Assembly (NCBI GenBank): GCA_002104945.1
Contig: MCFH01000003.1
Span: forward strand, 1-64,000
Source: Piromyces finnis finn
Lineage: Eukaryota > Fungi > Neocallimastigomycota
Reading direction: 5' to 3'
DNA length: 64,000 nt
Shown here: piece after piece, positions 245-48,043 of the stretch
Layout: each line of letters opens with the position of its first letter
Numbering within the stretch: position 1 is the first letter of the stretch
Made by a program: the position numbers and the translations under genes
Notes under the pieces: model-generated
The model's input: the letters and a program-made list of their open reading frames with translations, nothing else
What the model was told of the DNA's origin: nothing
The model's database searches: none

Positions 245-3166
245 TTGAATAGTATAAATAATTGGGATATTAAATATTGGTTGACTATTTGTTGTTTATT
301 AAGTAGTAATATGAGTACTAGATATAGAATGTTAGACAACCGTGACGATGGAATAGCTGGAGTCAGTGACGCAGGCTCTGAGGCGAGTTCCATGATGGAT
401 ATTGAGGATGAGACTGGTAAAAGCGTTAACACCAGGGGAAAACTCATCCCAAAACCTCCAAGATTTTCGGGAAAAAGAAGTGAACTTCTTTACTTCCTGG
501 CAAGATTGGAGAAATACTTTAAATATAACTTGGAAGAAGATGCTACCGACGCCTACAAGCTGGATATCTTGGGATGCTACCTGGAAGGAACCGCCGCCGA
601 ATGGTTTGCCGACTTAGAAAGAGAAGAAAGCCCCCTGTTGAACTCTTACGAAGACTTTATCGAGGCAATGAAGGCTCGCTACAAAACTTGCAACAGTGCC
701 GATGTAGCCAATAGTCGACTTGCAAAATTGAAGTCAAGTCAATTCAAGAACGTCATGGACTACTGCGAGGAATTTGAAAAGATGGCTAGAGACTCGTCCT
801 TTAATGATGAAGCAAAGATCCATTTCTTTATGGAAGGTTTACCAACTTCAGTCAAGGAAAAAGCGAAGCTCCTTTACCCAAGAATTAGAAAGATAACTGA
901 GTTAATTAATGTTGTTGCTGCCAATGTAGAAGTAGAATGGAAAGTCTTCGGAAAGGATCCTATGGATGTCGACGGAAAGAAGAACCGAAGATATAACAGA
1001 GACTTAGGATCAAGGTACCTCTCTTATGGTGTAAAATATAGAAATTATGTAGACCAAGAAAACCCTACCACCTCAGCTAAGCCTAGAAAATGTTTCTTCT
1101 GCAAAAGGACTGGACATATTAAGAAGGATTGTCCTCAACTTAAGGATAAGGTTATAAATAGACCAAAAGCATTCATGGCTACTACCGCTGGAAGAAGAAT
1201 GTTAAATGTTTACGATATTCTGTTACAAGTTAATAATGGTGTTTATCTTAAGGCTCTTGTGGATTCTGGTTCGGACTTGGACTTTTTGGATTGGAAGGCC
1301 GTTGATAAGTACAAGATTCCATTCCAAAGAATGTTTAAGGATAAATATGTTGAAGGTATAGGTGGTAATGGATTTTTGAAGTATGAAACAATTCCTTTGA
1401 TAATGAATATCAAGAATCATAAGGAATCCATTCAATTCTACCTTACTGATCTTCCTTCTGGTATTTCTGTCATTCTGGGTAAGAATTGGTTAAGAAAACA
1501 CGATCCTACAATTAGCTTTAAGGATCAAACTCTTGAATTCAAATCCGAATTCTGTTCTTTGAATTGCTGTGCTACTCCAGAAGACATGAAAAGAAGAAAT
1601 CAAGAAGCACAATTGGCCAAAGAAGAAGAAAGAAGAAAAGAAAAGGAACTCGTACAAGAAATACTTAACAATTATAAGAATAGTTTAAGAATTAGAGAAA
1701 GTGAAATTAAGAACAAAGAAAATATAAAAATTATAGATAAAAATAAGAATTCATGTATTAAAAAGAAATGTAGTAAAAACTTAAAATTAAATAAAAAGAA
1801 TGTTCAAAAGTATATTGTATGTAGTGTTATTTCAAATGAAGGAAATAAAGGTGAAGATGTTGAAGAAAGTGTTGTAGAAATTCCTGATGTATATAAGGAA
1901 TTTGAAAGTGTATTTGATGAAGTTGAGTGTAATGAACTACCTCCACATCGAATATACGATTGTAAAATAAGATTGAAAGATAAAGATAACTTATTTTATG
2001 GTCCTTTATACCCTCTAACAGAAGAAGAAAGGAATACGCTAAAGGAGTATATTTCTGAAAATCTAGAAAAAGGATTTATAAGACCGTCTACTTCACCTGC
2101 TGGAGCACCTGTGCTATTTGTTAGGAAAAAGGATGGAACTTTAAGATTGTGTGTTGACTACCGAAGACTCAATGAAAACACAATCAGGGATTCATATCCA
2201 CTACCTCTCATATCTGAATTATTCGATAGATTAAGAGAAGCCAAAGTTTTTACTAAACTTGATCTCAAGTCTGCTTATAATCTAGTTCGAATAAATGAAG
2301 GTGATGAATATAAGACTGCATTTAGGACAAGATTTGGTCACTTTGAATATCTTGTCATGCCGTTTGGATTAAAAAACGCTCCTGCAACTTTCCAACATTT
2401 TATCAATGATGTTCTCGGGGAATACTTGGATGAATTCGCCTTTTCTTATATTGATGATATTCTTATCTATTCGAAAAACTTGGAAGAACACCGAAAGCAT
2501 GTAAAGAAAGTTCTTCAAAGATTAAAAGAAAATGGTCTTTATGCGAAACTTAGCAAATGTGAATTTGAAACTTCAGAAACTACTTTCTTAGGGCATGTTA
2601 TCTCAGATAAGGGAATCTCTATGGATCCAAAAAAGGTTAAAGCTATTATGGAATGGCCTGTGCCAACATCTGTTAAAGAAGTTCAGTCGTTTATTGGATT
2701 ATGCAATTATTATAGAAGATTTATTCCAAACTTTGCTAGTATTGCTAAACCGTTACATAATCTAACTAAGAAAGATGTCAATTTTCATTGGCCAGAAGAA
2801 TGTAATGAAGCTTTTTGTATATTAAAGAAATTCTTTACCGAGGAACCAATTTTAATTCATGCTGATCCTGAATTACCTTTTGTGGTTGAGACAGATGCAA
2901 GTAATTTCGCAATCGGTGCCGTATTATCTCAAAGATTACCGGATAATAACGAGCTTCATCCAATTTGTTATTATTCAAGAGGATTGACTAAATCGGAAAA
3001 GAACTACCCAATTTATGATAAGGAACTTTTGGCTGTTATTGAAGCTTTGAAACAATGGAGACATTACTTAGAAGGAGCTAAGCATCAATTTATGATCTAC
3101 ACAGATCATAAAAATCTTACTTTTCCAAGGAAGCCCGAATTATTATCGCAAAGACAAATTCGATGA
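245..3166 (+). CDS. A1 Gag-PR-RT-RNase H polyprotein, truncated by a premature TGA
   Basis: CCHC knuckle CFFCKRTGHIKKDC, protease LVDSGS, RT YIDD, RNase H ETDAS. Stop TGA at 3164-3166 is TGG (Trp) in A2. The track start is TTG; the real start may be ATG 311 or 329. Confidence 0.9.
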   Translation: MNSINNWDIKYWLTICCLLSSNMSTRYRMLDNRDDGIAGVSDAGSEASSMMDIEDETGKSVNTRGKLIPKPPRFSGKRSELLYFLARLEKYFKYNLEEDATDAYKLDILGCYLEGTAAEWFADLEREESPLLNSYEDFIEAMKARYKTCNSADVANSRLAKLKSSQFKNVMDYCEEFEKMARDSSFNDEAKIHFFMEGLPTSVKEKAKLLYPRIRKITELINVVAANVEVEWKVFGKDPMDVDGKKNRRYNRDLGSRYLSYGVKYRNYVDQENPTTSAKPRKCFFCKRTGHIKKDCPQLKDKVINRPKAFMATTAGRRMLNVYDILLQVNNGVYLKALVDSGSDLDFLDWKAVDKYKIPFQRMFKDKYVEGIGGNGFLKYETIPLIMNIKNHKESIQFYLTDLPSGISVILGKNWLRKHDPTISFKDQTLEFKSEFCSLNCCATPEDMKRRNQEAQLAKEEERRKEKELVQEILNNYKNSLRIRESEIKNKENIKIIDKNKNSCIKKKCSKNLKLNKKNVQKYIVCSVISNEGNKGEDVEESVVEIPDVYKEFESVFDEVECNELPPHRIYDCKIRLKDKDNLFYGPLYPLTEEERNTLKEYISENLEKGFIRPSTSPAGAPVLFVRKKDGTLRLCVDYRRLNENTIRDSYPLPLISELFDRLREAKVFTKLDLKSAYNLVRINEGDEYKTAFRTRFGHFEYLVMPFGLKNAPATFQHFINDVLGEYLDEFAFSYIDDILIYSKNLEEHRKHVKKVLQRLKENGLYAKLSKCEFETSETTFLGHVISDKGISMDPKKVKAIMEWPVPTSVKEVQSFIGLCNYYRRFIPNFASIAKPLHNLTKKDVNFHWPEECNEAFCILKKFFTEEPILIHADPELPFVVETDASNFAIGAVLSQRLPDNNELHPICYYSRGLTKSEKNYPIYDKELLAVIEALKQWRHYLEGAKHQFMIYTDHKNLTFPRKPELLSQRQIR

Positions 3167-3169
3167 AAT

Positions 3170-4813
3170 TTGTTCTTAACACGTTATGACTTCAAAATAC
3201 AATATAGACCGGGTAAAGAAGGTGGAAAACCTGATGCTTTTTCAAGACGCCCTGATTATGAAAAGGAAAAAATTAATAAAGAAGATGAAGAAGCTTATTC
3301 CTGTTTGACAGTCAAAGAAATTGAAGATACTTTATGTCTTGTGTCTATTCGAGGAAATCTTAAAGAAGATTTAATTAAAGAAATTAAAGAAGATGAAGAA
3401 ATTAAAGAGTTAATAAAAATACTACAAGGAAAATCTACCGCAAATAAGAAGTATAAGAAATTAATGAAAAATTTTAAGTTAAGTGAAGAAGGAATTCTTT
3501 TGTATAAAAGTTTAATTTATGTACCAAAGAAAATGAGAAATACAATAATCTCGATGCATCATGATAATCCAATTCATGGTCATTTTGGTATTATCAAAAC
3601 AAAAGAATTAATTACAAGAAACTTTGTTTGGATAAACATGACTCAAGATATAGTTAAGTTTATTGCTTCTTGTAAAGTTTGTGGAGCTGCTAAGGTTGAT
3701 CGTCATAGACCTTATGGACTTTTACAGCCGTTACCTACTCCTGAAAGACCGTGGTCTTCTGTTTCAATGGATTTTATAACTGATTTGCCAAAGTCAAAGG
3801 AAAAAACAGTTATAATGGTTGTTGTGGATAGATTAACGAAGATGGCTCACTTTATTCCGTTTAGAATGATTCCTACTGCTCAAATTGCTGCTGATGTTTT
3901 CTTTAGAGAAGTTTTTCGTTTACATGGTCTACCTGATGAAATAATATCGGATCGAGGAACCCAGTTTACTTCAGAATTTTGGCAAAGATTATGCACTTTG
4001 TTGAACATAAAGCACAATATCTCGAGTGCTCATCATCCTCAAACAGACGGGCAGACTGAACGTGTAAATAGTATTTTAGAACAATTTCTTAGATGTTATA
4101 TTAACAAAAGAAAAGATAACTGGATGAACCTTTTGCCTTATGCTGAATTTGCGTATAATAATACACTTCAGCAATCCATAAATCAAACACCATTCTTTGC
4201 AAATTATGGGCAAAATCCAAGATTTAGTACCGAAATTCCTGCTGATAGCGACAATAGAAGAGCTAACAGGCACGCCTCTCAGATGCAAGATAATATTAAA
4301 TTTTTAAAGAAGAACTTAGAAAAAGCCAAGGAAAGATATAAGAAGTATGCCGATTGTATTAGACTTATTGGACCTAAGTTAAAGGTTGGTGACTTAGTTT
4401 GGTTAAAGCGTCCTGACTTACTTCCTAAAGGACCTCCAAAATTAACAAATAAGAAACTTGGACCATTTAAGATTATTGAAAAAACAGGACCCGTTTCTTA
4501 TAAATTGGAACTATCAGAAAGTTTAAGATGTCATCCCGTTTTCCATATTTCGAACTTAGAACCTTATGTTGAAAGAGAAGTTGAAGTGAATGAATCAACT
4601 TCTAGAATTCCAAACATTGCTTCCGATTCTGCTGAAGGAAGAATTCCATTGAAGATAGTTAGTGAAAAAGTTATTAATGGAACTAAGTACTACTTTATGG
4701 TTTGGAAAAACTTATTACCTTCAGAAAGTACATGGCTTAAAGAAGATGAAATCGATGACCCTCAATTGATCCAGGAATACCTTAAACATAAGTCGCTCAG
4801 GGGCTCGACTTAA
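3170..4813 (+). CDS. A1 in-frame continuation: end of RNase H, integrase and chromodomain
   Basis: HHCC (HDNPIHGH...CKVC), D,D-35-E core, GPF motif and C-terminal chromodomain (YYFMVWKNLLPSESTW). Same frame as 245..3166. Confidence 0.9.
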   Translation: MFLTRYDFKIQYRPGKEGGKPDAFSRRPDYEKEKINKEDEEAYSCLTVKEIEDTLCLVSIRGNLKEDLIKEIKEDEEIKELIKILQGKSTANKKYKKLMKNFKLSEEGILLYKSLIYVPKKMRNTIISMHHDNPIHGHFGIIKTKELITRNFVWINMTQDIVKFIASCKVCGAAKVDRHRPYGLLQPLPTPERPWSSVSMDFITDLPKSKEKTVIMVVVDRLTKMAHFIPFRMIPTAQIAADVFFREVFRLHGLPDEIISDRGTQFTSEFWQRLCTLLNIKHNISSAHHPQTDGQTERVNSILEQFLRCYINKRKDNWMNLLPYAEFAYNNTLQQSINQTPFFANYGQNPRFSTEIPADSDNRRANRHASQMQDNIKFLKKNLEKAKERYKKYADCIRLIGPKLKVGDLVWLKRPDLLPKGPPKLTNKKLGPFKIIEKTGPVSYKLELSESLRCHPVFHISNLEPYVEREVEVNESTSRIPNIASDSAEGRIPLKIVSEKVINGTKYYFMVWKNLLPSESTWLKEDEIDDPQLIQEYLKHKSLRGST

Positions 4814-4824
4814 GAAGAGGGGCA

Positions 4825-5635
4825 TGTAAAATATTGTATTAATAGAATAATGTATTTTAATACGTATTTAAAATAATGTACAATGTATCGAATTAATGTA
4901 CCGTAAATCTTTACAAAATTTATATCACAATACATTAACATAAATCTATGTGAAATCTAAAGTTACGATAAAATAATGTATTACAATACATTAACATAAA
5001 TTTATGTAAATTTAATTTTATGATAAGATAAAGTTTTTGATGATAAAATAAATTTTTTAAATTAAATAATTTTTAACCAATAAATATTTTAGATAAGAAA
5101 AAATTTTTTTTATAAACTAAGCCTCAAAATTAGAAATAAATAAATTAAATATATGTTTGAAATATAATCAACCATATAGTAAATAAATCAAAACTTTATT
5201 TTAAGTTTAGAAAATTCTTTAGTAAATAAATTGAATTTAAATAGTTTAATACAAATAAATTCTTTTAATAAATGCATAAATGTAAACAATGTAAAATTAT
5301 AATATTAAAACATGTATATTAGAATTTATTCAATTTATTTAAAAAGTATAAATAAAGAAAATTTTTCAACTATTGAAACGATAGTTGGAAAATCGTATAG
5401 TTTAGTTATATAGTTAGTTTAGATTATTAGTTTTAATTTAATTAGTTAATAATTGATTACCTAGTGAGGGCTCTGGTGAAATAACCTTCACGGTAAAGTA
5501 ATCAACGGTTGTTTTAGTTTAGTTTAGTTTAATATAATTTAATAAATAAATAAAGTTTAATAATAAATAAATTTATAACTAGTGTTAGTTTGATTTAGTG
5601 TATACAAACCTGAACTTAGAATAGAATATTTTACA
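4825..5635 (+). repeat. A-family LTR, variant X (811 bp), 3' LTR of A1
   Basis: TGTAAAATATT...AATATTTTACA termini, internal duplication of CAATACATTAACATAAAT, followed by CCTCC. Near-identical to 57735-58545. Confidence 0.95.
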
Positions 5636-5937
5636 CCTCCTCCAGGATTCGGATACCAGACGAATCTAGAATTTTAATATTTAAATATATGTTTTTCTTT
5701 TTTAATAAACTAAACTAAGGAGTGAATTTTCTTAATTATAAAAATACATTTAATATAATAAAATACATTTTTTTTTAATATTACTAAAGTTAAAAATAAA
5801 ATATTGATAAATTTGATATTAATAAATTGTTTAATAATAAAATTGATATTGATAATGATATTAATAAGTTTTGATAATAATAATAATTGTGATTTTAATA
5901 TTAATAATAAATATAATTTGAATTTTTTAACTATTTT

Positions 5938-8900
5938 TTATTTCTTTCTATTAAATTTTTTAAGTAGCCCCTTGCAATTTAGATTTTCTTCAGGCTCCCA
6001 CGAAGCTTCATTGATTGAATACCCTTTCCATTTAATCAGGTATTGTATTTTTCCGTAATGTCTTCTTTTATCCAGAATTTCTTCAACTTTGTATTCTTCT
6101 TCATTGTCAACGGTAATAGGTGGCGGTGGTGGTTGAGATCTTCCAAATTTATCTTCGACATATTTCTCGAGATTGGATACATGAATAACTGGATGAATCT
6201 TAATAGATTTTGGGAGACTTAATTTAAATGTAATATTTGATATTTTTTCCAAGATTTTGTATGGGCCGAGTTTTCTTGGCTTAAATTTTTTATTTCCTTT
6301 GTGGATAATTAAAGAACTATCCAGCCAAACTTTGTCACCAACTTTAAAATTCGGAGCTTCTTTTCTACGTTTGTCAGCATGCTTCTTCTGGGTTTCCATG
6401 GCAGATTTTAAATTTTCTTTTAAGGTATTAATTAAAGTTTTAAAATCTCTTGTAAACTCTTCTGCTCTTGGGACTTTAGATAAGTCTGGAATAACTGGTG
6501 AATATTTTGGATGAAAGCCGTAATTCAAAAAGAATGGAGAAAATTTGGATGATTCTTGAACCACGTTGTTATAACTAAATTCTGCAAGACTAAGAAAACT
6601 TTTCCAATTTGAACCTTTATAATTTGAGAAACATCTTAAATATTGTTCTATAACGGAGTTCACCCTCTCCGTCTGACCGTTTGATTGATGATGAAATGGA
6701 GTAGACAACTTAAGTTCAATGCCAAGGGAGGAACAGATGGATTGGAAGAATTTAGAGGTAAATTGAGAACCTCTATCCGAGACAATAGATTCAGGTAGGC
6801 CATGAAGACGGAAAATATTATCAATAAAGGCTGTGGCTGTTTCGGCGGCGGAAGGAATACTTTTGAACGGAATGAGATGAACCATTTTTGTAAGACGATC
6901 AACAACAACAAGAATGCAAGTGAAACCAGAAGATGAAGGCAAATCTGTAATGAAATCCATTGAAATGGATGACCAAGGACGCTCAGCAATAACAAGAGGA
7001 TTCAGAAGACCATAAGGTTTATGACGAAAGGTTTTTGAACGACAACAAACTTCACAAGAACGAACGTAGTCTTTAACATCAGAAGAAATAGAAGGCCACC
7101 AGAAGTCTCTAGCAATAAGAGAAGATGTTTTCTTTATTCCGAAATGACCAGCTGAAGGAGAGTCGTGACAGAGTTTAAGAATTGAAAGACGACAATTAGG
7201 AGGAACATAGATTCTGTCAGTAAAAAGGAGAAAACTATTGCTTAAGGAAAATTTGTCAATTTGAGGGTGAGGTATTGGAGGTTTCCTACAATCAAGATAT
7301 TCACAGATTTTATTGTAAAAGTCATCAATTATATATTCGGAAAGAAAAGAATCACTAATGGACGAAACAGAAGTCACAATGGCACAAAAATTTTCAGGGC
7401 GAAGAACATTAAAAGGAACATCAGAAGAGGAATTCGAATTGATAGCATAATCAGGACGACGAGATAGAGCATCAGGCTTACCGTTAGAAGAACCAGAACG
7501 ATAAATAATAACAAAGTTAAATTCAGAGAGAAACAAAGCCCAGCGAACAAGACGTTGAGACATTTTTTCAGGTTTCTTTTGATAGAGTAAATTTCGATGA
7601 TCCGAGTAAATCTTAAAAGTAGAAGAAGAGCCTTTAAGTAGATGACGCCATGTTTCAAGAGCAGCAACGATAGCTAAGAGCTCTTTATCATATATTGGAT
7701 AATTACGTTCAGGACCAGTAAGAGAGCGAGAAAAGAAAGCAACTGGATGGGTCATATTATCAATTGGAGAGACTTGCGAGAGAATAGCACCAATGGCAAA
7801 GTTACTTGAATCAGTTTCGACTATGAATGGAAGTTCACGATTAGGAAATATAAGAACAGGAGCAGAAACAAATAAGGACTTGAGTGAATCGAAAGCATCT
7901 TGAGCTTCTTTAGACCATACAAATTTAACATTTTTCTTCAAAAGTTTATGCAAAGGATGAGCGATCTTTGCAAAATTTGGAATAAATCGACGGTAGTAGT
8001 TCGCAAGACCAAGAAAAGATTGAACCTCTTTAACATTAGATGGAGTAGGCCAGTTTAAAATAGAAGAAACTTTATTTGGGTCCATGTGAATACCATCAGT
8101 AGAAATCCTATGACCAAGGAAAACAATAAAAGAAACAAAGAACTCGCATTTTTCCAATTTAGCATAGAGCCCAGCATCCCTCAGGTGTTTCAAAACAGTT
8201 TTGACATGAGATATATGAGATTTATAATCCGAGGAAAAAATAATAATATCATCTATGTAAGAGAAAGCGAATTTACCAAGAACGTCTTCAAGAACATCAT
8301 TAATGAAATGTTGAGAAACAGCAGGTGCATTTTTCAACCCAAAAGGCATCACACAGTATTCAAAATGACCTAACTTGCAAGTAAAAGCGGTTTTATATTC
8401 ATCACCACTTTTAATCCTGACCAAGTTATAGGCAGAACGAAGATCCAATTTTGAGAAAATCTTCCCTTTTCCAAGATGTTCAAGCATATCTTGTATAAGA
8501 GGAAGGGGATAAGAATCACGAATAGTTATGGAGTTTAATTGGCGATAGTCAACACACATACGAAGTTGACCGTTTTTCTTAGGTACAAACAGAATAGGAG
8601 CTCCCGCAGGCGATTTTGATTTTCTAATAAATCCTTTCTTGAGATTTTCTTTTATATATTCTTCTAAAGCAATTGATTCGGTTTCTGTTAGAGGATAAAT
8701 CGGTCCATAAAACAGTTTTGAATTTTCTTTGAGTTTTATTTCACAATCGTATGGACGGTGTGGAGGAAGTTTTTCAGCATTAGATTCATTGAAGACATCA
8801 GCAAAGTCAGAGAGAACATCCGGAAGTATAATAGAATAATTGGGTTCTGATTTAGAGTTTGAATCGGATTTGAGAATAGAATTGGATTGAATATTAGAAT

Positions 8901-10380
8901 CAGAAAAAGAAGTCAAAACAGAAGTTGGTTCTTGATTTGAGAGAGACGAAGTAGAAAAGTTAACAGAAGACTTCTTAGAAACAGAATTGTTAATATTTTT
9001 TGAAGAACCCGAACAGAGAATAGTACAAGTACGATTAGTTTCGTTTTGAGATTGGATGTTTTGTTTATCGACAAATATAGGGTAAGCGAATGAATCATGC
9101 GGAGGTTCGTAGGAAGGATCTTCCATTGCAGGAAAAGCAGATCTTTCTTCAGGAAATTCAGGGACATTATTGGAGAGTGTTATACAACGATTATAACAGT
9201 AATCGGATACAAATGAAATTTTGTTCTTTGTGAAATCGATAGAAGGATTGTGTTCTTTAAGCCAGTCTATTCCAAGAATACAAGGATAATAAGGTAGATC
9301 AGTTACATAGAATTGTGTTCGACAGAGATGATCTTTGTAGCGAAGATTCAAAGGAGATGTAATTCCAAAAAGAGATTGTCGACCACCGATACCAACGATA
9401 TTTGGGAGGTTACCATCATCATGATAAGGAATGTTATTATCGTTACAGTAATCTACATCAATTAAATTAAGTTTGGATCCTGAGTCAATAAGAATATCCG
9501 TATTTAGTTCATAAGAAAGTTTAAATTTAGTTGTCATTTTATTATGAGTTTTGTTTTCTTCTTTAGGAGCGGATATAAGTGTGGGAATAGATATTAGTGA
9601 AGGATTTTCACGATCTTTATTCTTTCTTTTTAGACAATTATTAAGCTTATGACTTGAAGCACCACAATACACACAAAGATTTTCTTTCTTTCTTCTTTCC
9701 TTTTCTTCGTTTGAGATAGGGCCATGGTTATTCCTGTTTGTAATGGACTTTGTTATTTTTGAAGAGTGATGAAAAGATCTTTTCTTTCGGTTTTGGTCAT
9801 TGTTTGAACCAGAAGGGAAAAAGGTATGATGTGTAGATAGTCTTGAATCGATTCTTGAAGCAATAGTCTGTAATGAAAGAAGATCCCTAGGACCCGGAAA
9901 CATTTCCAAAATACGAACGGCAACTTGTTGATTAAGGCCAGCTATAAATGCATCCATTTTGGCTTGTTCATTCCAGTTTGATTCATCAGCATAGCGGTTA
10001 AATTCCAAGATATAGCCTCTAATTCCTCCTAATCGGCGTTGTTTTAAGGTTCTAAGCATTTGATTTGCAACATAGGTAGCATCGTTATATCCATAAAAAG
10101 CCTTAAATCTGTCAACAAAAGCTTGGTAGTTATTAAGACACGGATCATGGTTGTTTATAAGAGTAGCAGCCCAGTTCATAGCGTCCCCATAAAGTCTTGA
10201 TATTATGTAGAGAATTTTGGTTGCGTCGTCTTGATACCGTTCAGGATATAGCATAAACACTAGCTCCACCTTAGCTAAGAAACCCTTCAGATACCTGCGA
10301 TCCCCTGCAAAACCATCCTTAAGAGTTGCGTTTTCGAAAATATTATTATTATCCATATGGTTGTTTTCGTTCTCTTCCAT
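5938..10380 (-). CDS. B Gag-Pol polyprotein (1480 aa, intact) with chromodomain integrase
   Basis: [18 protein letters not shown], protease LIDSGS, RT YIDD, RNase H ETDSS, integrase [15 protein letters not shown] and chromodomain [25 protein letters not shown]. Confidence 0.96.
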
Positions 10381-10487
10381 AGTACTTATGATGTTTTCTT
10401 TAATAAGCTTTAATAAATTTGTAAAAATAATAGAATAAAGTATTTAATTATATTTATTAATTGAGTAAATCTTTTTATTAAATAATA

Positions 10488-11195
10488 ATATAAACCAGAT
10501 TATATAGTGTTAAACCATCAAATATATAACCTGTTTTATTCTTTATAATAAGTCCTTCGTAGCTCTTCACGATAACACGTATAAAGTCGATTGTTAATAT
10601 TAATTAAATTAATAAAAGAAAGGAACGGTGTAAAAATTTTTTTTAGTGTCTAACTTATTGTTAGCAATAAAAATTATTACAGGTTTTCTTTCCCTATATC
10701 AACCTTATCCGAACGTAGAAGTATTATGTATAAGAGTTTAACTTCTCACGCTAAAGGAGTTATAAAGAATATTATTTTATATTATTACAATTTTAATAAA
10801 TTGTCTTAACAATTAATAATTATAATTAAAAATTAGAAATTGTTTTATTAGAAAACTTAATTTTAAAATGTATTAATTAAGAAATATTATTTTATTAAAG
10901 TAAGGCATTTCCGGCTATTTTCCGGTCTATAATCAAACAGCAAAAGATAGTATACAACTATAAATCTCACGCCAGCTTGCTTATTACAGCGTCTTGTACG
11001 TGGTGTACCTCGGATTCTCCTACTTCCTTATTCAAAGTAGAATAGCTCAGAGCCTGCCAACCCAATTATTGTACAGGTTAAACTCGATCCCGTTAATCTT
11101 TTACTTTTTATAGTTTGAATTATATACCGCTTCTAAAGCGTACTAATTCTACTACTTTAAGTAAAAATATTTCTTTAAAGAAAAGCTTCAACAAT
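10488..11195 (-). ncRNA. Candidate conserved structured RNA in the B 5' leader (homologous to 41711-42410)
   Basis: Two conserved blocks shared with the F leader, including 21 identical nt GAATTAGTACGCTTTAGAAGC and several covarying helices. Confidence 0.7.
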
Positions 11196-11271
11196 AAAAC
11201 TTAAAAGTTTTATCTATAACAATTTCTTAAACACTAAGGTATTAAGCTTTTATATTATAAGGAGATTTTAT

Positions 11272-11712
11272 TGTAAAGAAATGTGTCTTTAACAATAAAA
11301 ACAAATTATAATATTTACTAAATAACTTAGTAATATTAACACTTTAAAATATTCTGTAAATTATTAATTTATAAAAATATCATTAAAAACACATAGAATT
11401 TAACTTAATAAGTTAGTGTTTAATAATATAATTATTTATTAATAAAATCTCGATTCTTTAAAATATTTGGGAAAATTCACTCGTATTTATACTAAAAATT
11501 TTTTAAATTAATTTATAAAATTTTTTCAACTTAAAATTCTTAACCAATCAATAATCTTCATATAAAATAAAATTTAAAAATAAAATAAAATAAAATAAAA
11601 TTATAATTTTTTTTAAAATAGTATCTATGAGGTCTCAAACTAGTGTCATTCAGACTCAAAGTCTTAGCTATTAACCACTAAGACAATTTAGTTATTTCTA
11701 GTATTCATTACA
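11272..11712 (-). repeat. B 5' LTR (441 bp)
   Basis: TGTAATGAA...TTCTTTACA termini in element orientation. Matches 58555-58995. Confidence 0.93.
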
Positions 11713-28681: not shown

Positions 28682-28712
<31 letters not shown>

Positions 28713-36733: not shown

Positions 36734-36749
36734 TACAAAATTAAAATTG

Positions 36750-40841: not shown

Positions 40842-40855
40842 ATTTCATTATTTTT

Positions 40856-41565
40856 TGTTAAGGAACCAACAAATAATGTTATTCTTGTCATAATTAATGA
40901 TTATGACCTAATCCATTCATTATTGTTCCTAAATGTATGAAAACTTTACAATATTCTTATTTGTAAATTAATGTATACACTTAAATTATATTTAAAATTA
41001 TTAATAATTATTTTTTATTGAACTTAAATTTTATTTTATTAAACTTAAAAATTAATTTAGTAATAATAATATATTGAAAATTATAGTTTATTGAACTTTT
41101 AGTTTAATTTATCAAGTTAATGAATTTTTATTAATTAAAATTATGAATAATATTTCTGTAAAATAGTAAAATTTTTTAGTTAAATATATTTAAAGTAAAC
41201 TTTTAATGTATGTTAATCAATTTAATAATATGTATAAATATTTATTATAATAGTAATGTAATTTTATTATTCATTTAAAAGTAATTTAAATACTAAAATT
41301 ATGTAAATAATTAAAGACTAATTCTTTTAATTAACACTACTTAATTTTTTACAAAAAGTATAAAAAGGTGTATATTATAAGAATTAGAGAATATACAGAT
41401 ATTTTTATTTTTATTTTTATTTTATTTTATAATTTTATATTAATATCTTAATAAAACAATTTTATTAATAAAACAATTTTTCTTATTTCATTTTAATATT
41501 ATTTTTGAGTATTAATAAATTTATTAATATTTTATAAATAAAAGTAAATTCCTCGAACCGTAACA
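40856..41565 (+). repeat. F 5' LTR
   Basis: TGTTA...TAACA termini. Confidence 0.95.
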
Positions 41566-41572
41566 TAAAAAT

Positions 41573-41590
41573 TGGTGGAGATATCGGGGA
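41573..41590 (+). promoter_or_regulatory. F primer-binding site, complementary to tRNA-Ala
   Basis: TGGTGGAGATATCGGGGA is the complement of ...TCCCCGATATCTCCACCA. U70 fits the G3:U70 alanine identity pair. Confidence 0.75.
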
Positions 41591-41710
41591 ATAATATTAA
41601 TAAAAATTATTAATACATAGGATAAAGTAATATTAAAATATTACTAAAATATTATATAAATTTCTTAAAAATTTATTACCCTTCAAAGTTATAGGTAATA
41701 TTTATATTAC

Positions 41711-42410
41711 TGTTGAAGCTTTAAGGTATAATATTTTAGTAGAACTGAATTAGTACGCTTTAGAAGCAGTACTTATTTAGGAATTAGTGGTTAAGTTTTT
41801 AGGTCTAGTTTATCTTTCACAGTAGGTTACTGGAAAGCGCTGAACCTTTCTATTTTGCTAGAGAAATAGAAGTGCCTCGCATAATTGCTACATGACACTG
41901 GTAATACGGTAAGCTGGGCAATTGTGAACTACTTAAGCACCCTAAATAAGTATTGGAAAATTGCTGTGAAATGCTGTTCTACTATACTTATTATTGTAAT
42001 TCAAATTTTTAATAAATTAAATATTATTTTAGTATTTATAATTTTTTTAAAAAAAAAAAAAAAATATTTTTTTTTTTAATTGAACGATTTTTAAAAATTA
42101 TTCTTTTTAAAATATAAATAAATAATTCGAAAGTGACCCTTAGCGTGGCAAGTTAAACTGCTGTACGTAATACTTTGGTGTTCAATTATATCTGATAATT
42201 GGGGAAGATAATCAATTATTTTCTTTCCGCTAATTAAGTTAGTGATAATAAAGAAATTAATTACGTTACTTCCTTTTATTAAATTATATTTACTATTAAC
42301 CATCGGGTATATTTGTGGCTTATCATCAAAGAGCTACGAGGGATTTTCACTTAGAATTACACAACCTATAATACTTGATGGTTTAACATTATATAGGTTG
42401 GCCTATATTT
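41711..42410 (+). ncRNA. Candidate conserved structured RNA in the F 5' leader (homologous to 10488-11195, minus strand)
   Basis: Shared motifs TGTTGAAGCTTT, GAATTAGTACGCTTTAGAAGC, TACAWGAC..GTAATA..AAGCTGG, AAGTTAAACT, AAGAGCTACGA and TTGATGGTTTAACA, with covarying stems. Confidence 0.7.
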
Positions 42411-42443: not shown

Positions 42444-42489
<46 letters not shown>

Positions 42490-43119
42490 GATATATATAT
42501 CTATTCTTTTTGTTGATTCTCTTCGAGTAATTTAATATTGCTAATTGAAATATTCTTTTCTTACTGTTTTAAGTTAAACAAGTTATATCAGCATAGACAA
42601 GCCTTATTAACTAATCAACAGAGGTATACTAGGGGTGGTAGAAAGATCCTGAAGCACGTGACGGAACTTAGATCGTGTGAATAAGGTGACGGCAACATTT
42701 ACCATTGGACGAAAGACTCTTAGTTAATAGTCTATTATATATAATTTGGTCGGTAACTTGAATCAGTAATAACAATATTAAATTAAAATTCTTGCTAGTA
42801 AATTGAAAACAAATAATAATTAACTATAAGAAAAACAGAAAACAAAAGTAATAATTTCATCTTTTCTGACTGAACTAAGATAGTAAGGAGTGATACTAAA
42901 AATTTAAATAAAGAATTGGTAGTACGTGCTGTGCTAGATTATTTGTATCTCATTCTGTCAAGTGGTCGATAAAGGAATTTCGAGCTTGGTTACAACTAAT
43001 AAGTGGTCGATAAAGGAATTTCGAACTTATAATTTTTTTTTAGACTATCAAAGGTATTTTTGAGTCTATACTGTGTCATCTTGTACTGCAATAAATTCGG
43101 TCAAGGAAAATACAAGAAA

Positions 43120-44000
43120 ATGAGCAATTCTACTACAAGGATAGATTTCAAGGAGTTGAAGAAGGAACTCAAGGATATAGAAAAACTTTCCAAAGATAAT
43201 TTGGACATAAGATCCTGGGCTTCTGAAAAAGTTTATGGATTGAACTTCAAGATATCACTAGTGCCAAGAAAATTTACATGGCATGTGTGCTTACTTCTAA
43301 GGGTGAACCAAGAAAGGTAATCCAAGAGTTGGAAGATAAAGACAGTGATAGTGAAGATGAATATGAAAGTGAAAATGAAGAAGAGAATCAGAAAAATGAA
43401 TCTAATGAAGAAGATTATCCCTCACTTGGGAAAATTATCAATGCCCTTGAAACATTTTATGGGTTAAAAGAAGATCAAAGTATGTTATTACGGGAACTAA
43501 GAAGACTACGTATAAGAAGAAATGAATCAGTTAAAGATTTCAATAGAAGATATAGATCTTTATATTTAAAGTTGGATAAGAAAAAGAAGAAGCAGATTAG
43601 TGTGTTAGATTATGCAGATTCTTTACAAAATAATAAAGAAGCATGGAGAAAAGTATCTTTAAAAGATGATATCACTCTAGAAAAGGCCTTTAAGATAGCT
43701 GAGAAGGTAGATAGGTTATCTACTAGAATAGATAATGATGGTAATCTACCAATGACTACTGCAATAACCAAAAGTTATAATAATTTTCAACCATACAAGA
43801 GAAAAGTTTCTTTTACTGAAGCCAAAAAGCCTAATAAAGATGATGAAATGAATAACCTAGTCAAGAAAATGAAAAATTTAACTATTAAAGCTTGTTTCTT
43901 CTGTAGTGAACCTGGTCATTATCAACAAAATTGCCCAAAACTTCAAGCCATTATTGAAGGAAACAAGAAGCGTTATTATGATAATCATTTAAATCATTAA
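43120..44000 (+). pseudogene. F gag, frameshifted near 43230 (ORFs 43060-43320 and 43278-44000)
   Basis: ATG 43120 MSNSTTRIDFKELKK...SWASE continues as LWIELQDITSAKKIYMACV in another frame. CCHC CFFCSEPGHYQQNC. Confidence 0.8.
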
Positions 44001-44056: not shown

Positions 44057-47000
44057 ATGCCAAGTGAAGAAACAACAAGCCAGAGTGATTGGTCGAAAGA
44101 AGAATATGATGAAGAAATCGAAAGTGACTTTGAAGATACTGATATTAATGAACAGTTCTTTGTATGTGCTAATAAAAGGAAGTTGGATAAAATAAGCAAA
44201 GAACAAGATGGTAATAAAGAAAAACGACTTCACAAAAACTTGAAAAATGATCCTAGACCTATTCTTACACCTGCTCTTAGGAAACGTAAAGCACAAGAAT
44301 TAGAAAATATACCAATAGATGTTTCTCCTAAGCAACTGCATCCTTCTATTATTGCTCAACCGAATATCAGAGAACAAAAACTAAAAGAAAGAAAACTTCG
44401 GGATAAAGAGCGTGCTAGTAGTAGTGAACAAAAGGAAGAAGAAAAGAATGAATTGGCAAGTTCTAATGAAGATCCTATTATTATCGACTATGATGAAGAA
44501 GAAATGTTGTCTGCAATTACAGATAAGAAAGGTGCTAAGGTGGTAGAGAAAGATAACACAAGTGAATCAACCAAATCTACTTCTAATTCAACTCTAAATA
44601 AATTAATGAAAGAGCAAAAGAAAGAAAAACCTGCAGAATCGAAGGTTAAGAAAACTGCTAGAAATATTCAAATGATAGCAGATACGGAAGAATATAATGT
44701 AGTTAAAGATCTTAACGAAACAAAATGCAATATTACTTTTGGTCAATTACTTAACTCGGCTCCAAAGTTACGAACGCAAGTGTCACAAGGTCTTAAACTG
44801 GAAAAGAACAACACAAAAATTGTGGGAGCTCTGGAGAATTTTAATGCTACTTCGGTATTAGTAAATAATGTAGATCATTTGTATGTAAGCAAAAGTAAAG
44901 AAGTATCAGAAGAAGATATCGCTATGGTAGATGCAACGGTTGATGGGGTACCAGGTAAATTATTAGTTGATTCCTGTAGCAACTTAAGTATTATAACAAA
45001 AAAATATTTAGATAAACTTCCCCATCAATATGAATCTATTGGATTGAGTTGTGGAAGAATACGTTTAGCTACTAAAAATGATGACTATTCGGAAGGTATA
45101 ATTATTAGAGTACCGGTCCAGATAAATGATCTTACAATCACTGCTGATTTTAGAGTGGTGGATAAAGAAGACCCCTTTTATGATATGTTAATTAATTTGA
45201 AAACCCAAATGGATAACAACTTATTTATCCACCCACTTCGCTATAGTCTTTGCAGATTTGATTCAAATGGATTTATTGAAGATATTGCTCCAATTAATAA
45301 CAAATATGATGATGAAGAAAAGATTATGTGTATGATACGTAGAGTCGGTGATGAAGATTTTAAAAGTGATTTGAAAAATATTGAAGGTTTACCACCTTCA
45401 GAATATATTCACAATAAAAATTTTACTGAGACTCTTAATGAAAAGTATCGAGAACAAATTGTTCGGATATTGGAAGAGAATATTGAAATTATTGCTACTT
45501 CTTCTGAAGAACTAACACCTTCGAATTTAACTCCCCATAAGATTAATTTAAAGCCAGGAGCAAAGCCAATTAAACAAAGATCATATAGGTTAGCCAAGTT
45601 CAAATCTGATATACTTAAGGAAGAATTGTCTAAATTGATTAATAAAAAGCTAATTGAGCCATCGTACTCGGAATGGTCTTCTCCGGTGGTTTTGGTCCCG
45701 AAGCATAATGGGAAATGGAGAATGTGCGTGGACTATCGAAGAGTTAATGATTTGTCTGAAAAGGATGCCTATTCAATTCCTTTTATAGATGAGATATTTG
45801 ATAGTTTACATGGTGCAACTATATTCACTACTATGGACTTATATTCCGGCTATCATCAAATCCTTATGGATGAAGAAAGCGTTGAATTGACAAGTTTTAC
45901 AACTAAGTTTGGAAATTACCAATTCAAGGTTATGCCTTTTGGTCTCACTGGAGCACCCGCTACATTTCAGAGGGAGATGAATCGGATTCTGTTTCCGTTA
46001 ATTGGAAAGTGTGTTTATAACTTCATTGATGATATTCTGATCTATTCAAAGAGTATTGAAGAACATATTGAACATATAAATCAAGTTTTAGCAATTTTCC
46101 GGGAAAACAAACTAAAAATCAATATTGAAAAATGTCATTTTATGCAAACTGAAGTTGACGTGTTAGGCCATCGTTTAACTACAGAAGGTCTTAAACCATT
46201 AGATAACAAAATCCAAGCTATAAAAAATTGGAAACCTCCTTCGAATATCCATGAATTAAGATCATTCCTAGGTTCAATTGGATATTATAGAGATTTTATT
46301 CCTAATTATGCTAAACTTACTGCTCCCTTGTGTAAGCTGCTTAGAAAAGGTGTTCCTTTCAAATGGTGTAATGAACAACAAGAGAGTTTTATTATATTGA
46401 AAGAAAAGTTAATTAATGCGCCTATTCTGAAATTCCCTGATTTTGAGAAAGAATTTATAATCCGAACAGATGCATCGTATGAAGGAATCGGAGGAGTATT
46501 ATTACAAAAGGAAGGCACAGATATTGAACATCCAATTCATTATATTAGCCGAAGTCTGACGAAAGCAGAAAAAAATTATGGAATTACTGACTTGGAAGGG
46601 ACTGCCTTATTTTACTGCATTACTAAATTAAAGCCTTATATAATGGGAAGTCCATTCAAGACTATCGTCTATACTGATCATAAACCATTAATTGGATTAT
46701 TTAAAAATAAGGAGCCAAACAATGCAAGACAAACAAGATGGTGTTTAACAGCTAGTATGCTAGGAGTTGATATTCGTTATGAACAAGGTAAAAAGAATGT
46801 TGTAGCAGATGCACTGTCTCGAATGAGAAATGACAAAGATAAGGAAGTGTTAGCTACTAAAATTAATAAAGGTATAGAAGAAACCATGCTATCTAAGGTA
46901 ATTAAAGAATTTGTTGAAGAAAAGTTCACCAAAATAGGTGGGGTGGATTACTTTATTGATGGAAGGAATTATCGAAAACTGATCACGGAAACCAATGAAA

Positions 47001-48043
47001 AGCTGAAATTGATTTTGGAAGCTCATAACATTGGACATGAAGGATATTATAAAACTTATCAACGTCTGAGAAAAAGCTATTATTGGAACGACATGGTTAA
47101 TGATATTCGAAGAGTTGTAGCCAAATGTGAAAAATGCCAACTTAATCGCCCTCAACCATATCCAGAACCTACGGAAAATCTTCCAACTGAGGTTGAAGCT
47201 CCTTTCACTCATCTGGGTTTAGATATCATTGGTCCATTGGTAAAAACTCGTAACAATAACCAATATATTATAGTTGCAGTGGATCATTTCACAAAATGGG
47301 TCGAAGCAGAACCCACCGAAAATATCACTTCAAAGGATGTCATAAAATTTTTAATCAATGTTTTCTCTCGGCATGGAGTACCACAAGTCATTACAACCGA
47401 TAACGGTGTCCAATTTACCTCAGATATGACCAAAGTTTTCCTGGACTTATATGATGTCTATGTCAAGTTTGTCTCAACTTATCATCCTGAAAGTAATGGT
47501 TTGACTGAAAATAGAAACAAAGAAATTGGAAAGCTTCTAAGACTGCTTGGAAAAGAAAACAAGGATTGGGATGAAATTTTGCCTTCTGCTCTTTGGGCGC
47601 TCAGAACTACTAAAAATACTGTCACAAACCATTCTAGTTTTGAATTGGTTTATGGAAGAGAAGATCAGCAACCCTTTGATATTGCCGCCAGACCTACTAA
47701 GGGTATTAATCAGTCTTCGGATGAAATCTTACTTGAGAAGTTTATTAATCATTACAGGTGGACGTTGGAAGCTTGTGAAAATATTAAAAATGCGAATAAA
47801 TACTGGGCTACTAGAAGGGAAGAAAAACAAAGTATGACTAAGGGCAAAAATATCCATATCGGTGATCTAGTATTAGTTAGAAATTTTAATCGAACGAAGT
47901 TAGAGCCTTATTTCGTTGGACCACTCAAAGTTGTCAAGAAACAATTCAATACTGTTACTTTAGCTGATATATCCACTGGAATTCAGATGAACCGAAATGT
48001 TCATCTTAAGAATATTGTAAAGTTTAACTCTGCTTTTGCGTAA
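44057..48043 (+). CDS. F Pol (long charged N-terminus, PR, RT, RNase H, integrase; no chromodomain)
   Basis: LLVDSCS, WRMCVDYR, FIDD, RTDAS, H..GH..CEKC, DDE and GPL motifs. The frame is open from 43985. Confidence 0.94.
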   Translation: MPSEETTSQSDWSKEEYDEEIESDFEDTDINEQFFVCANKRKLDKISKEQDGNKEKRLHKNLKNDPRPILTPALRKRKAQELENIPIDVSPKQLHPSIIAQPNIREQKLKERKLRDKERASSSEQKEEEKNELASSNEDPIIIDYDEEEMLSAITDKKGAKVVEKDNTSESTKSTSNSTLNKLMKEQKKEKPAESKVKKTARNIQMIADTEEYNVVKDLNETKCNITFGQLLNSAPKLRTQVSQGLKLEKNNTKIVGALENFNATSVLVNNVDHLYVSKSKEVSEEDIAMVDATVDGVPGKLLVDSCSNLSIITKKYLDKLPHQYESIGLSCGRIRLATKNDDYSEGIIIRVPVQINDLTITADFRVVDKEDPFYDMLINLKTQMDNNLFIHPLRYSLCRFDSNGFIEDIAPINNKYDDEEKIMCMIRRVGDEDFKSDLKNIEGLPPSEYIHNKNFTETLNEKYREQIVRILEENIEIIATSSEELTPSNLTPHKINLKPGAKPIKQRSYRLAKFKSDILKEELSKLINKKLIEPSYSEWSSPVVLVPKHNGKWRMCVDYRRVNDLSEKDAYSIPFIDEIFDSLHGATIFTTMDLYSGYHQILMDEESVELTSFTTKFGNYQFKVMPFGLTGAPATFQREMNRILFPLIGKCVYNFIDDILIYSKSIEEHIEHINQVLAIFRENKLKINIEKCHFMQTEVDVLGHRLTTEGLKPLDNKIQAIKNWKPPSNIHELRSFLGSIGYYRDFIPNYAKLTAPLCKLLRKGVPFKWCNEQQESFIILKEKLINAPILKFPDFEKEFIIRTDASYEGIGGVLLQKEGTDIEHPIHYISRSLTKAEKNYGITDLEGTALFYCITKLKPYIMGSPFKTIVYTDHKPLIGLFKNKEPNNARQTRWCLTASMLGVDIRYEQGKKNVVADALSRMRNDKDKEVLATKINKGIEETMLSKVIKEFVEEKFTKIGGVDYFIDGRNYRKLITETNEKLKLILEAHNIGHEGYYKTYQRLRKSYYWNDMVNDIRRVVAKCEKCQLNRPQPYPEPTENLPTEVEAPFTHLGLDIIGPLVKTRNNNQYIIVAVDHFTKWVEAEPTENITSKDVIKFLINVFSRHGVPQVITTDNGVQFTSDMTKVFLDLYDVYVKFVSTYHPESNGLTENRNKEIGKLLRLLGKENKDWDEILPSALWALRTTKNTVTNHSSFELVYGREDQQPFDIAARPTKGINQSSDEILLEKFINHYRWTLEACENIKNANKYWATRREEKQSMTKGKNIHIGDLVLVRNFNRTKLEPYFVGPLKVVKKQFNTVTLADISTGIQMNRNVHLKNIVKFNSAFA

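What the first reader, a model, noticed from the sequence alone, without database searches (positions are those of the whole stretch)
10488..11195. ~700-nt covarying structured RNA in the 5' leader of chromovirus B, shared with the unrelated element F
Seen: in element-sense orientation the B leader aligns with the F leader (41711-42410) as two blocks separated by a variable AT-rich linker, although the LTRs, priming mode, gag and ORF layout of B and F are unrelated. Helices are kept while the sequence changes. (1) Closing stem: B TTAAAGTA/TACTTTAA (11160-11153/10902-10895) vs F TAGTAGAAC/GTTCTACTA (41737-45/41976-84). (2) A 21-nt identical hairpin GAATTAGTACGCTTTAGAAGC. (3) TTCTACTT/AAGTAGGA vs TTCTATTT/AAATAGAA. 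(4) Conserved TACAWGAC-[stem]-GTAATA-[stem]-AAGCTGG inside different outer stems. (5) CTAAC/GTTAG vs CTAAT/GTTAG. (6) Terminal stem CAGGTTATATA/TATATAATCTG vs CAACCTATA/TATAGGTTG around the conserved loop TTGATGGTTTAACA, whose GATGGTT can pair upstream with AACMATC (possible pseudoknot). Inference: a functional RNA module such as an IRES, packaging/dimerisation element or ribozyme. I do not recognise it as a known family. From memory, element (4) resembles the group II intron IC1 lambda-epsilon' motif, but I see no GUGYG start or domain V.
Basis: partly seen in the sequence, partly recalled or inferred. Interest (0 to 1): 0.88.

Follow-up and report, generated by a model that had tools for sequence, protein, structure and literature searches.

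The report
Swappable RNA cassettes in retrotransposon leaders
Two distantly related jumping genes of an anaerobic gut fungus carry the same roughly 300-base folded RNA modules ahead of their first gene; the modules are conserved by shape, match no Rfam family, and have been traded between element families.

Summary
B's leader (11197-10486, minus strand) and F's leader (41707-42410) share conserved, covarying RNA structure on the sense strand.

It is not one 700-nt RNA. It is two independent cassettes of about 290-305 nt, each closed by its own stem and separated by an A/U spacer. F carries a third cassette (42524-42794).

In 10 distinct relatives from gut-fungus (Neocallimastigomycota) assemblies, the cassettes occur as 1, 2, 1+2, 1+3, 2+3 or 1+2+3. 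Where the context is known they are in that order, in sense, and upstream of gag. They occur in two Ty3/gypsy lineages whose Pol proteins are only 29-35% identical.

Cassette similarity does not follow lineage, so cassettes have been exchanged between lineages.

Alignment folding beats column shuffles (z = -7, -28, -14). Cassette 2 has a covarying pseudoknot. Rfam finds nothing.

Upstream ATGs are depleted 2.5- to 5-fold, which argues for ribosome scanning and against an IRES. Group II intron and ribozyme readings have no support.

Best reading (about 0.4): portable genomic-RNA selection (packaging or dimerisation) domains spread by recombination. Host-factor roles in translation, stability or export remain open.

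The parts
10892..11197 (-). B cassette 1 (~305 nt). Closing stem at 11160-11153 / 10902-10895; invariant 21-nt hairpin region at 11149-11129.
   Evidence: nhmmer hit. Structure and covariation. Single-sequence z = -3.2.
10773..10891 (-). A/U-rich spacer between B cassettes 1 and 2. It contains no ATG.
10486..10772 (-). B cassette 2 (~287 nt). A multi-helix core with a long-range helix (10721-10714 / 10572-10565) and a terminal hairpin (10533-10523 / 10506-10496).
   Evidence: Single-sequence z = -4.1.
10735..10742 (-). 5' arm of the cassette-2 pseudoknot in B. It pairs with the terminal-loop arm at 10516-10509.
   Evidence: Duplex and compensatory variants in L024, L051 and L011. Coordinates.
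10509..10516 (-). Terminal-loop arm of the cassette-2 pseudoknot in B.
10381..10485 (-). A/U-rich spacer between cassette 2 and B's gag start codon. It contains no ATG.
5938..10380 (-). B gag-pol polyprotein ORF, intact at 1480 aa. Domains: Ty3 capsid, one CCHC knuckle, RT, RNase H, integrase, chromodomain.
11268..11712 (-). Putative 5' LTR of B. A 99.6% identical copy lies at 58555-58999. No matching 3' LTR was found.
40855..41566 (+). F 5' LTR, 100% identical to the 3' LTR at 48066-48777. It starts 12 bp from the 5' end of tRNA-Ser.
41573..41589 (+). F primer-binding site of the tRNA 3'-end type. The same motif is seen in the relatives L040 and L061.
41707..41989 (+). F cassette 1.
   Evidence: Single-sequence z = -2.7.
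42123..42410 (+). F cassette 2. Pseudoknot arms at 42152-42159 and 42380-42387; terminal stem at 42362-42370 / 42392-42400.
42524..42794 (+). It is closed by a 12-bp stem. B lacks it; L001, L023 and L061 have it.
   Evidence: Alignment fold z = -13.8.
42960..43067 (+). F-lineage-specific imperfect hairpin repeats just upstream of gag. Variants are seen in all F-like relatives read.
43120..44000 (+). F gag, with one CCHC knuckle. It is interrupted by one frameshift relative to intact relatives.
44057..48043 (+). F pol ORF (RT, RNase H, integrase; no chromodomain).

Best explanation
SHOWN. The leader between the LTR/PBS and gag is a string of independently folding RNA cassettes of 270-305 nt. 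Each is closed by its own long-range stem and set apart by A/U-rich spacers. The cassettes fold on the sense transcript. Cassette 2 is a multi-helix core locked by a pseudoknot between its 5' strand and the loop of its 3' hairpin.

The cassettes are portable. They occur in different combinations but the same order in two Ty3/gypsy lineages of anaerobic gut fungi. They have moved between those lineages.

INFERRED. They are cis-acting domains of the full-length genomic RNA that mark it for selection, by dimerisation and/or encapsidation. Recognition would be by the single-CCHC nucleocapsid part of Gag, the only Gag feature the two lineages share, or by RNA-RNA contacts.

Their helices are short, A/U-rich and nearly free of AUG. 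Scanning ribosomes can therefore still read through to gag, and one RNA can serve as both message and genome.

RNAs of different families that carry the same cassette would be co-packaged. Reverse transcriptase could then switch templates inside the shared cassette. That would explain the mosaic distribution.

Confidence in the structural and modular part is about 0.9. Confidence in the packaging/dimerisation function is about 0.4; that is the figure given below.
For: Structure:
- Alignment folds beat column shuffles for all three cassettes, with z = -7.2, -28 and -13.8. Compensatory changes are seen in 24/60, 45/70 and 21/77 pairs.
- The pair-count tool gives 0 of 500 shuffles on all five measures, and slid controls collapse to 37-51% paired.
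- Sense folds are more stable than antisense folds (-33.9 against -23.3, and so on), and there are invariant G-U pairs.
- The pseudoknot has three independent compensatory variants. Both partners are lost together in L001 and L018.

Position:
- The cassettes lie between the PBS and gag. They are in sense and in the order 1<2<3 in all 12 elements.

Exchange between lineages:
- Pol identity is 29-35% between lineages and 58-81% within them.
- Cassette 2 is 55-68% identical between lineages and 56-73% within them.
- Cassette 3 of the B-like L001 is 81% identical to those of F and L023. That equals the F-L023 value.
- A contiguous stretch of about 770 nt covering cassettes 2 and 3 is shared by F and L001 at 72%.

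Other:
- Both Gags have one CCHC knuckle and nothing else in common.
- ATG depletion is consistent with scanning.
- Yeast Ty1 has a structured, pseudoknotted 5' domain that serves translation, packaging and reverse-transcription initiation (PMC5454406, PMC4974528).
Against: - No binding or packaging data exist.
- B-like elements can carry only cassette 1 (L050) or only cassette 2 (L011, L051). One Gag lineage would then have to accept two unrelated folds.
- F-like elements all carry lineage-specific hairpin repeats next to gag (42960-43067 in F). These are an equally good or better candidate for a lineage-specific packaging signal, which would make cassettes 1-3 accessory.
- Some F-like elements (L040 group) lack cassettes 1-3 and carry another module instead.
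- No conserved GC-containing palindrome sits in an apical loop. The only conserved palindrome, AAGCUU at the 5' edge of cassette 1, is mostly paired in local folds.
- Sampling is small (4-8 distinct sequences per cassette) and comes mostly from metagenome contigs.
Confidence: 0.4

Rival explanations
1. Translation-control modules. The cassettes bind ribosomes or initiation factors, as an IRES, a cap-independent enhancer or a shunt structure would. This would let gag be translated despite a 0.9-1.6 kb leader. They are shared because the host translation machinery is the common partner.
For: - The leaders are very long compared with other elements in the window (35-410 nt).
- Cassette 2 has a compact pseudoknotted fold.
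- Horizontal exchange of IRES modules between unrelated viruses is well documented (PMC7354566).
Against: - ATG is depleted in the cassettes (25 observed against 62.7 expected) and even more in the spacers (9 against 41.5) across 10 leaders. In B it is 2 against 8.9 and in F 5 against 25.5. This is the signature of 5'-end scanning, not internal entry.
- There is no conserved short uORF ahead of a hairpin base, as a shunt would need.
- In F, cassettes 1-3 end 325 to about 1130 nt upstream of gag, with other structures in between.
- No IRES or other Rfam family matches at E <= 10.
- A scanning-dependent enhancer is not excluded.
Confidence: 0.2
2. Host-factor handles for RNA fate other than translation: nuclear export, stability, localisation to assembly sites, or evasion of RNA silencing. 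They would be accessory modules that work independently of the element's own proteins and are therefore freely exchangeable.
For: - Presence and absence are mosaic within one Gag lineage, and cassettes are shared across lineages with unrelated Gag.
- Invariant unpaired motifs suggest a common trans-acting partner.
- From general knowledge, LTR retroelements of mammals carry portable structured RNA transport elements.
Against: - No candidate factor and no known motif were found.
- The helices are too short (17 bp or less) to act as Dicer decoys.
- The cassettes are always in the leader and never in the 3' untranslated part. That part is very short in these elements, so this is weak evidence.
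Confidence: 0.2
3. Passenger sequence. Either an independent small retroposed element or a captured host non-coding RNA landed in the leaders and is carried along without serving the retrotransposon.
For: - Long poly(A) runs follow cassette 2 in F (42449-42485) and in L001.
- The L018 contig carries cassette 2 with no ORF nearby.
- The cassettes are self-contained units.
Against: - No termini or target-site duplications can be recognised. The flanks are low-complexity, so this test is weak.
- B has no poly(A) run.
- Order and orientation are the same in all 12 elements.
- All other hits in about 400 kb of fetched sequence lie upstream of gag.
- Structure is maintained by compensatory change within element lineages that have intact ORFs. 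F has identical LTRs.
- No Rfam family matches.
Confidence: 0.08
4. A catalytic RNA: a self-cleaving ribozyme or a group II intron remnant.
For: The size, the multi-helix junctions, the pseudoknot and the invariant unpaired nucleotides are all compatible with a ribozyme.
Against: - There are no matches to any ribozyme or intron model of Rfam 15, even at E <= 10 or in relatives.
- Cleavage within the leader would separate the PBS from the coding part of the genomic RNA.
Confidence: 0.03
5. Hidden protein-coding exons separated by AT-rich introns.
For: GC-richer blocks alternate with AT-rich linkers, which resembles exon-intron structure in these fungi.
Against: - No ORF longer than 70 codons exists in the F leader, and the longest AUG-initiated ORF in the B leader is 11 codons.
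- Indels between copies are not multiples of three.
- Substitutions are pair-wise compensatory.
- ATG is depleted.
Confidence: 0.01

Closest known systems
Structured 5' domains of LTR-retroelement genomic RNA (Ty1 TIPIRT domain; retroviral leaders with packaging and dimerisation signals)
   Same: They lie downstream of the PBS and upstream of, or at, the start of gag. They are sense-strand, multi-helix folds with a long-range pseudoknot. The same RNA serves as message and genome (PMC5454406, PMC4974528).
   Different: There is no sequence or model similarity. Here the domains are discrete cassettes of about 300 nt with A/U spacers, present in variable combinations and shared by lineages with unrelated Gag. 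No binding or packaging data exist. PMC4974528 states that the Ty3 RNA structure was uncharacterised.
Horizontal exchange of IRES and other non-coding RNA modules between unrelated RNA viruses
   Same: A self-contained structured RNA in the 5' untranslated region evolves independently of the coding part and is passed between distant replicons by recombination (PMC7354566).
   Different: Those modules drive end-independent initiation. Here upstream AUGs are strongly depleted, which indicates scanning. The hosts are retrotransposons of a fungus, not RNA viruses.
Leader sharing between autonomous LTR retrotransposons and the non-autonomous or foreign RNAs they package (general knowledge)
   Same: Unrelated elements share leader sequence. 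The usual explanation is recognition by the same particle proteins followed by recombination.
   Different: Both B and F are autonomous elements with their own Gag-Pol. Sharing is by cassette, not of the whole leader plus PBS.
Pararetrovirus (caulimovirus) pregenomic RNA leader with ribosome shunt
   Same: A long (about 600 nt) structured leader in a reverse-transcribing element (PMC5902531).
   Different: That leader is one elongated hairpin with several short uORFs. Here there are several independent domains, almost no AUGs and no conserved uORF.
Group II intron domain I motifs
   Different: There are no Rfam intron hits at E <= 10, no six-domain architecture, and no boundaries.

Membership tests
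Retroelement leader cis-acting RNA (packaging/dimerisation-type domain) | Located on the sense genomic RNA between the PBS/LTR and the gag start | tested here: met
   F: PBS 41573-41589, cassettes 41707-42794, gag from 43120. B: LTR end 11268, cassettes 11197-10486, gag ATG 10380. The same holds in the ten relatives with a known gag context.
Retroelement leader cis-acting RNA (packaging/dimerisation-type domain) | Evolutionarily conserved, strand-specific secondary structure | tested here: met
   Sense folds are more stable than antisense folds, and there are invariant G-U pairs.
Retroelement leader cis-acting RNA (packaging/dimerisation-type domain) | Self-complementary or complementary exposed loop able to start dimerisation | tested here: inconclusive
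   The only conserved GC-containing palindrome is AAGCUU at the 5' edge of cassette 1, present in 6 of 6 sequences. In local folds it is mostly paired intramolecularly.
Retroelement leader cis-acting RNA (packaging/dimerisation-type domain) | Bound by the element's Gag/NC and required for selective encapsidation | not testable with these tools
   Only indirect evidence: both Gags have one CCHC knuckle.
IRES / cap-independent translation element | Match to a curated IRES or related covariance model | tested here: not met
   Rfam 15 gives no relevant match at E <= 10 in either leader (the only hit, mcrA sRNA at E = 9.5, is chance), and no match at E <= 0.1 in eight relatives.
IRES / cap-independent translation element | Internal entry, so that upstream AUGs are not selected against | tested here: not met
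   ATG counts: 2 against 8.9 expected (B) and 5 against 25.5 (F). Pooled: 25 against 62.7 in cassettes and 9 against 41.5 in spacers.
IRES / cap-independent translation element | Direct binding of the 40S subunit or initiation factors | not testable with these tools
   No test was possible.
Group II intron | Domain V, six-domain architecture and conserved boundaries | tested here: not met
No hit to any Rfam family, the group II intron models among them, at E <= 10.
Small self-cleaving ribozymes of retroelements (HDV-like, hammerhead and others) | Match to the family covariance model | tested here: not met
Independent retroposed insertion (SINE-like element or solo LTR) | Own termini with target-site duplication, and copies outside the host element | tested here: inconclusive
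   No termini or duplications are recognisable in the low-complexity flanks. Homology extends 5' of the TG-like start. All hits in about 400 kb lie upstream of gag except L018, whose context is unknown. No complete genome was available to survey.
Pararetrovirus-type shunt leader | A short uORF ending just before the base of a single elongated hairpin | tested here: not met
   There is no conserved uORF. AUGs are rare and lie inside conserved motifs. The leader has several independent domains rather than one hairpin.

The most novel reading that the evidence does not exclude
The cassettes are a previously undescribed set of large, pseudoknotted RNA folds. At least three families of about 300 nt exist, plus a fourth seen in relatives. 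They behave as mobile units in their own right: they hop between retrotransposon lineages, and carrying one gives an RNA access to a shared step of the replication cycle, such as cross-family co-packaging. That would make the leader a marketplace of RNA 'handles' rather than a lineage-bound signal.
Probability: 0.3. Interest if true: 0.8.

Novelty: new variant of a known kind. Interest (0 to 1): 0.62.

Why it matters
Structured RNA in the leaders of Ty3/gypsy elements is almost uncharted. A 2016 review states that the Ty3 RNA structure was uncharacterised (PMC4974528).

This finding contributes three things:
- Three RNA folds of about 300 nt with strong covariation and no Rfam counterpart.
- A clear case of non-coding cassettes being exchanged between retrotransposon lineages whose proteins are about 30% identical. 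The closest documented parallel is IRES exchange among RNA viruses.
- A natural presence/absence series (1, 2, 1+2, 1+3, 2+3, 1+2+3). This makes the function testable by observation alone, by comparing natural elements with and without each cassette in transcript, ribosome and RNA-fraction data.

It also adds candidates for new RNA families from a poorly studied fungal phylum.

Tried and rejected
- Rfam. I ran gathering thresholds on the whole window and E <= 10 on both leaders and on eight relatives. Only two tRNAs were found.
- First pattern scan. The loose cassette-2 pattern in IMG/VR returned six chance phage hits.
- Stricter patterns in IMG/VR and in prokaryote genomes gave nothing real.
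- The single metagenome scan gave two true copies, L018 and L023, among six hits.
- Exact-protein look-up of B found nothing. One NCBI contig had no DNA available.
- B's LTR pair. No 3' LTR was found. The 300 nt after B's stop codon abut element A's LTR.
- LTR-terminus idea. I asked whether the conserved TGTTGAAGC at the 5' edge of cassette 1 is a vestigial LTR terminus, since B's LTR starts with a similar octamer. I rejected this because homology continues upstream of it and there is no polypurine tract.
- Dimerisation-loop idea. I asked whether the AAGCUU palindrome is an exposed dimerisation loop. This is not supported.
A 175-position core model found the same eight copies and no remote ones.

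Full report
CONTEXT

The window is very AT-rich and packed with Ty3/gypsy LTR retrotransposons. The best protein relatives come from anaerobic gut fungi (Orpinomyces sp., Piromyces sp. E2) and from metagenome contigs. The source is therefore most likely a member of the Neocallimastigomycota.

B (ORF 5938-10380, minus strand) is an intact gag-pol polyprotein of 1480 aa ending in a chromodomain. F has identical LTRs (40855-41566 and 48066-48777). It has a tRNA-type PBS (41573-41589), a separate gag and pol, and no chromodomain. It sits 12 bp from a tRNA-Ser gene.

B and F are both Ty3/gypsy elements but are distant. Pol is 31% identical. The Gag proteins share only a CCHC knuckle. The LTRs show no similarity.

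THE OBSERVATION

The 21-mer is unique to the two leaders. The leaders align in two blocks around an AT-rich linker. Neither Rfam thresholds nor permissive E-values give any relevant match (the sole hit, mcrA at E = 9.5, is chance).

RELATIVES

I fetched contigs that encode relatives of B's polyprotein and of F's gag. One metagenome pattern scan added more. Profile searches over about 400 kb then showed that the '700-nt RNA' is not one unit.

- Block 1 (B 11197-10892; F 41707-41989) occurs alone in L050 and, with module X but not blocks 2 or 3, in L052/L053.
- Block 2 (B 10772-10486; F 42123-42410) occurs alone in L011, L051 and L024-L031.
It is shared with L001, L023 and L061.

The observed combinations are 1, 2, 1+2, 1+3, 2+3 and 1+2+3. 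Wherever the context is known they are in that order, in sense, and upstream of gag. L023's contig ends just upstream of block 2, so whether it has block 1 is unknown. The context of the 1.3-kb contig L018 is also unknown.

The other five elements in the window have leaders of 35-410 nt and carry no cassette.

STRUCTURE

Each block is a self-contained domain closed by a long-range stem.

- Block 2 (8 distinct sequences): RNAalifold gives 70 pairs, 45 with compensatory double changes. The energy is -33.9 against -0.8 +/- 1.2 for column-shuffled alignments, z = -28.
- Block 2 core, fitted to a covariance model: 92.6% of cells pair, against 77.5% in shuffles (0 of 500 reach the observed value) and 37-51% when partners are slid. 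29 of 49 pairs change on both sides.
- Block 1 (5 sequences): z = -7.2.
- Block 3 (4 sequences): z = -13.8.
- Sense alignments fold better than antisense, and there are invariant G-U pairs. The folded molecule is therefore the sense RNA.
- Single-sequence folds of the window's own blocks give z = -2.7 to -4.1.

Helix 5 is invariant or wobbles.

A pseudoknot exists in block 2. The 5' strand GUUAAACU pairs with GGUUUAAC in the terminal loop. Compensatory versions occur in L024, L051 and L011. Both partners are lost together in L001 and L018.

EXCHANGE BETWEEN LINEAGES

Proteins split cleanly into a B-like lineage (58-69% identity within it) and an F-like lineage (71-81%). Identity between the two is 29-35%. 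The cassettes do not follow this split.

- Block 2 identities between lineages (55-68%) equal or exceed those within lineages. For example, B-L023 is 68% but B-L001 is 58%.
- Block 3 of the B-like L001 is 81% identical to those of F and L023, the same as F against L023.
- F and L001 share a contiguous stretch of about 770 nt covering blocks 2 and 3 at 72%.

Cassettes have therefore moved between lineages long after the lineages separated.

CLUES TO FUNCTION

ATG triplets are strongly depleted relative to dinucleotide-preserving shuffles.
- B: 2 observed against 8.9 +/- 2.3 expected.
- F: 5 observed against 25.5 +/- 3.9 expected.
- Pooled over ten leaders: 25 against 62.7 inside cassettes and 9 against 41.5 in spacers.

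In B and F, the few remaining ATGs upstream of gag lie in conserved motifs. This is the signature of 5'-end scanning. It argues against an IRES and, with no conserved uORF, against a caulimovirus-type shunt.

There is no continuous ORF, and indels are not in threes. Coding is therefore excluded.

No termini or target duplications could be recognised. The constant order and orientation also argue against independent insertions. The low-complexity flanks and the lack of a complete genome make this test weak.

All F-like elements also carry lineage-specific hairpin repeats next to gag (42960-43067 in F). These compete with the cassettes for the role of lineage-specific packaging signal.

INTERPRETATION

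Shown:
- The leader contains portable, independently folding, sense-strand RNA cassettes.
- The cassettes are exchanged among co-resident Ty3/gypsy lineages.

Inferred, at about 0.4:
- They act in selection of the genomic RNA (dimerisation or encapsidation).
- Shared cassettes lead to co-packaging, and template switching then explains the mosaic.
- Ty1's pseudoknotted 5' domain is the nearest functional precedent (PMC5454406, PMC4974528).

Host-factor roles are each about half as likely. One is a scanning-dependent translation enhancer. The other is stability, export or localisation. The documented horizontal spread of IRES modules among RNA viruses (PMC7354566) shows that host-directed RNA modules can also be traded in this way.

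Ribozyme and group II intron readings have no support.

NOVELTY AND LIMITS

I found no description of these RNAs in Rfam or in the literature searched.

- Sample sizes are small, at 4-8 distinct sequences per cassette.
- Most relatives are metagenome contigs cut in the leader.
- No complete genome could be scanned, and nothing about function was measured.

F's gag is interrupted by one frameshift relative to intact relatives. B's ORF is intact.

SLIP

Noticed in passing
window 42960-43067; also L023, L024:1110-1285, L040:775-840, L061:9690-9715: Imperfect hairpin repeats (2 to 4 or more copies) lie just upstream of gag in every F-like element read. B-like elements lack them. They are a candidate lineage-specific signal.
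   Followed up: partly
L040:335-655 and L052:3335-3640 (also L053): This is a fourth stem-closed module (X) of about 300 nt in F-like leaders. It replaces or accompanies cassettes 1-3 and shares an 83% identical 70-nt core. The cassette repertoire is larger than three.
   Followed up: partly
window 36733-36750 and 40842-40855: Element E's 3' LTR ends 16 bp upstream of tRNA-Arg(TCT). F's 5' LTR starts 12 bp upstream of tRNA-Ser(TGA). Both look like integration targeted to Pol III genes, as known for Ty3.
   Followed up: no
window 11268-11712 and 58555-58999; 5636-5937: B's putative 5' LTR has a 99.6% identical copy beside element G. No 3' LTR of B was found. The 300 nt after B's stop codon abut element A's LTR, which suggests that A inserted into or next to B's 3' end.
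   Followed up: partly
window 43120-44000: F's gag carries one frameshift relative to intact relatives although its two LTRs are 100% identical.
   Followed up: partly
window 1-5635 and 51929-58545: A and G are two copies of one chromovirus family, 95.7% identical. G's polyprotein ORF is intact (1522 aa). A's ORF is interrupted once.
   Followed up: no
window 29469-30599, 61610-62513: There are extra copies of element C's 1.13-kb LTR. One is an inverted 99.7% copy just before element E, and one is an 88% copy near the window end. They are likely solo LTRs or further nested elements.
   Followed up: no
window 28261-28843, 48779-49321, 59121-59701: A repeat of about 540-585 nt is present three times at about 98% identity. 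One copy lies directly after F's 3' LTR. It was not identified.
   Followed up: no
window 42449-42485; L001:880-925 and 1360-1423; L024:1-137: Very long poly(A) runs lie between or beside cassettes in several leaders, but not in B. They could be functional unstructured spacers, retroposition scars, or simply a habit of this genome.
   Followed up: no
window 11193-11185 and 41711-41719; relatives L050, L052, L053, L061: A conserved AAGCUU palindrome sits at the 5' edge of cassette 1 in 6 of 6 sequences, and is an 8-nt perfect palindrome in L061. B's LTR starts with a similar octamer (11730-11722).
   Followed up: partly
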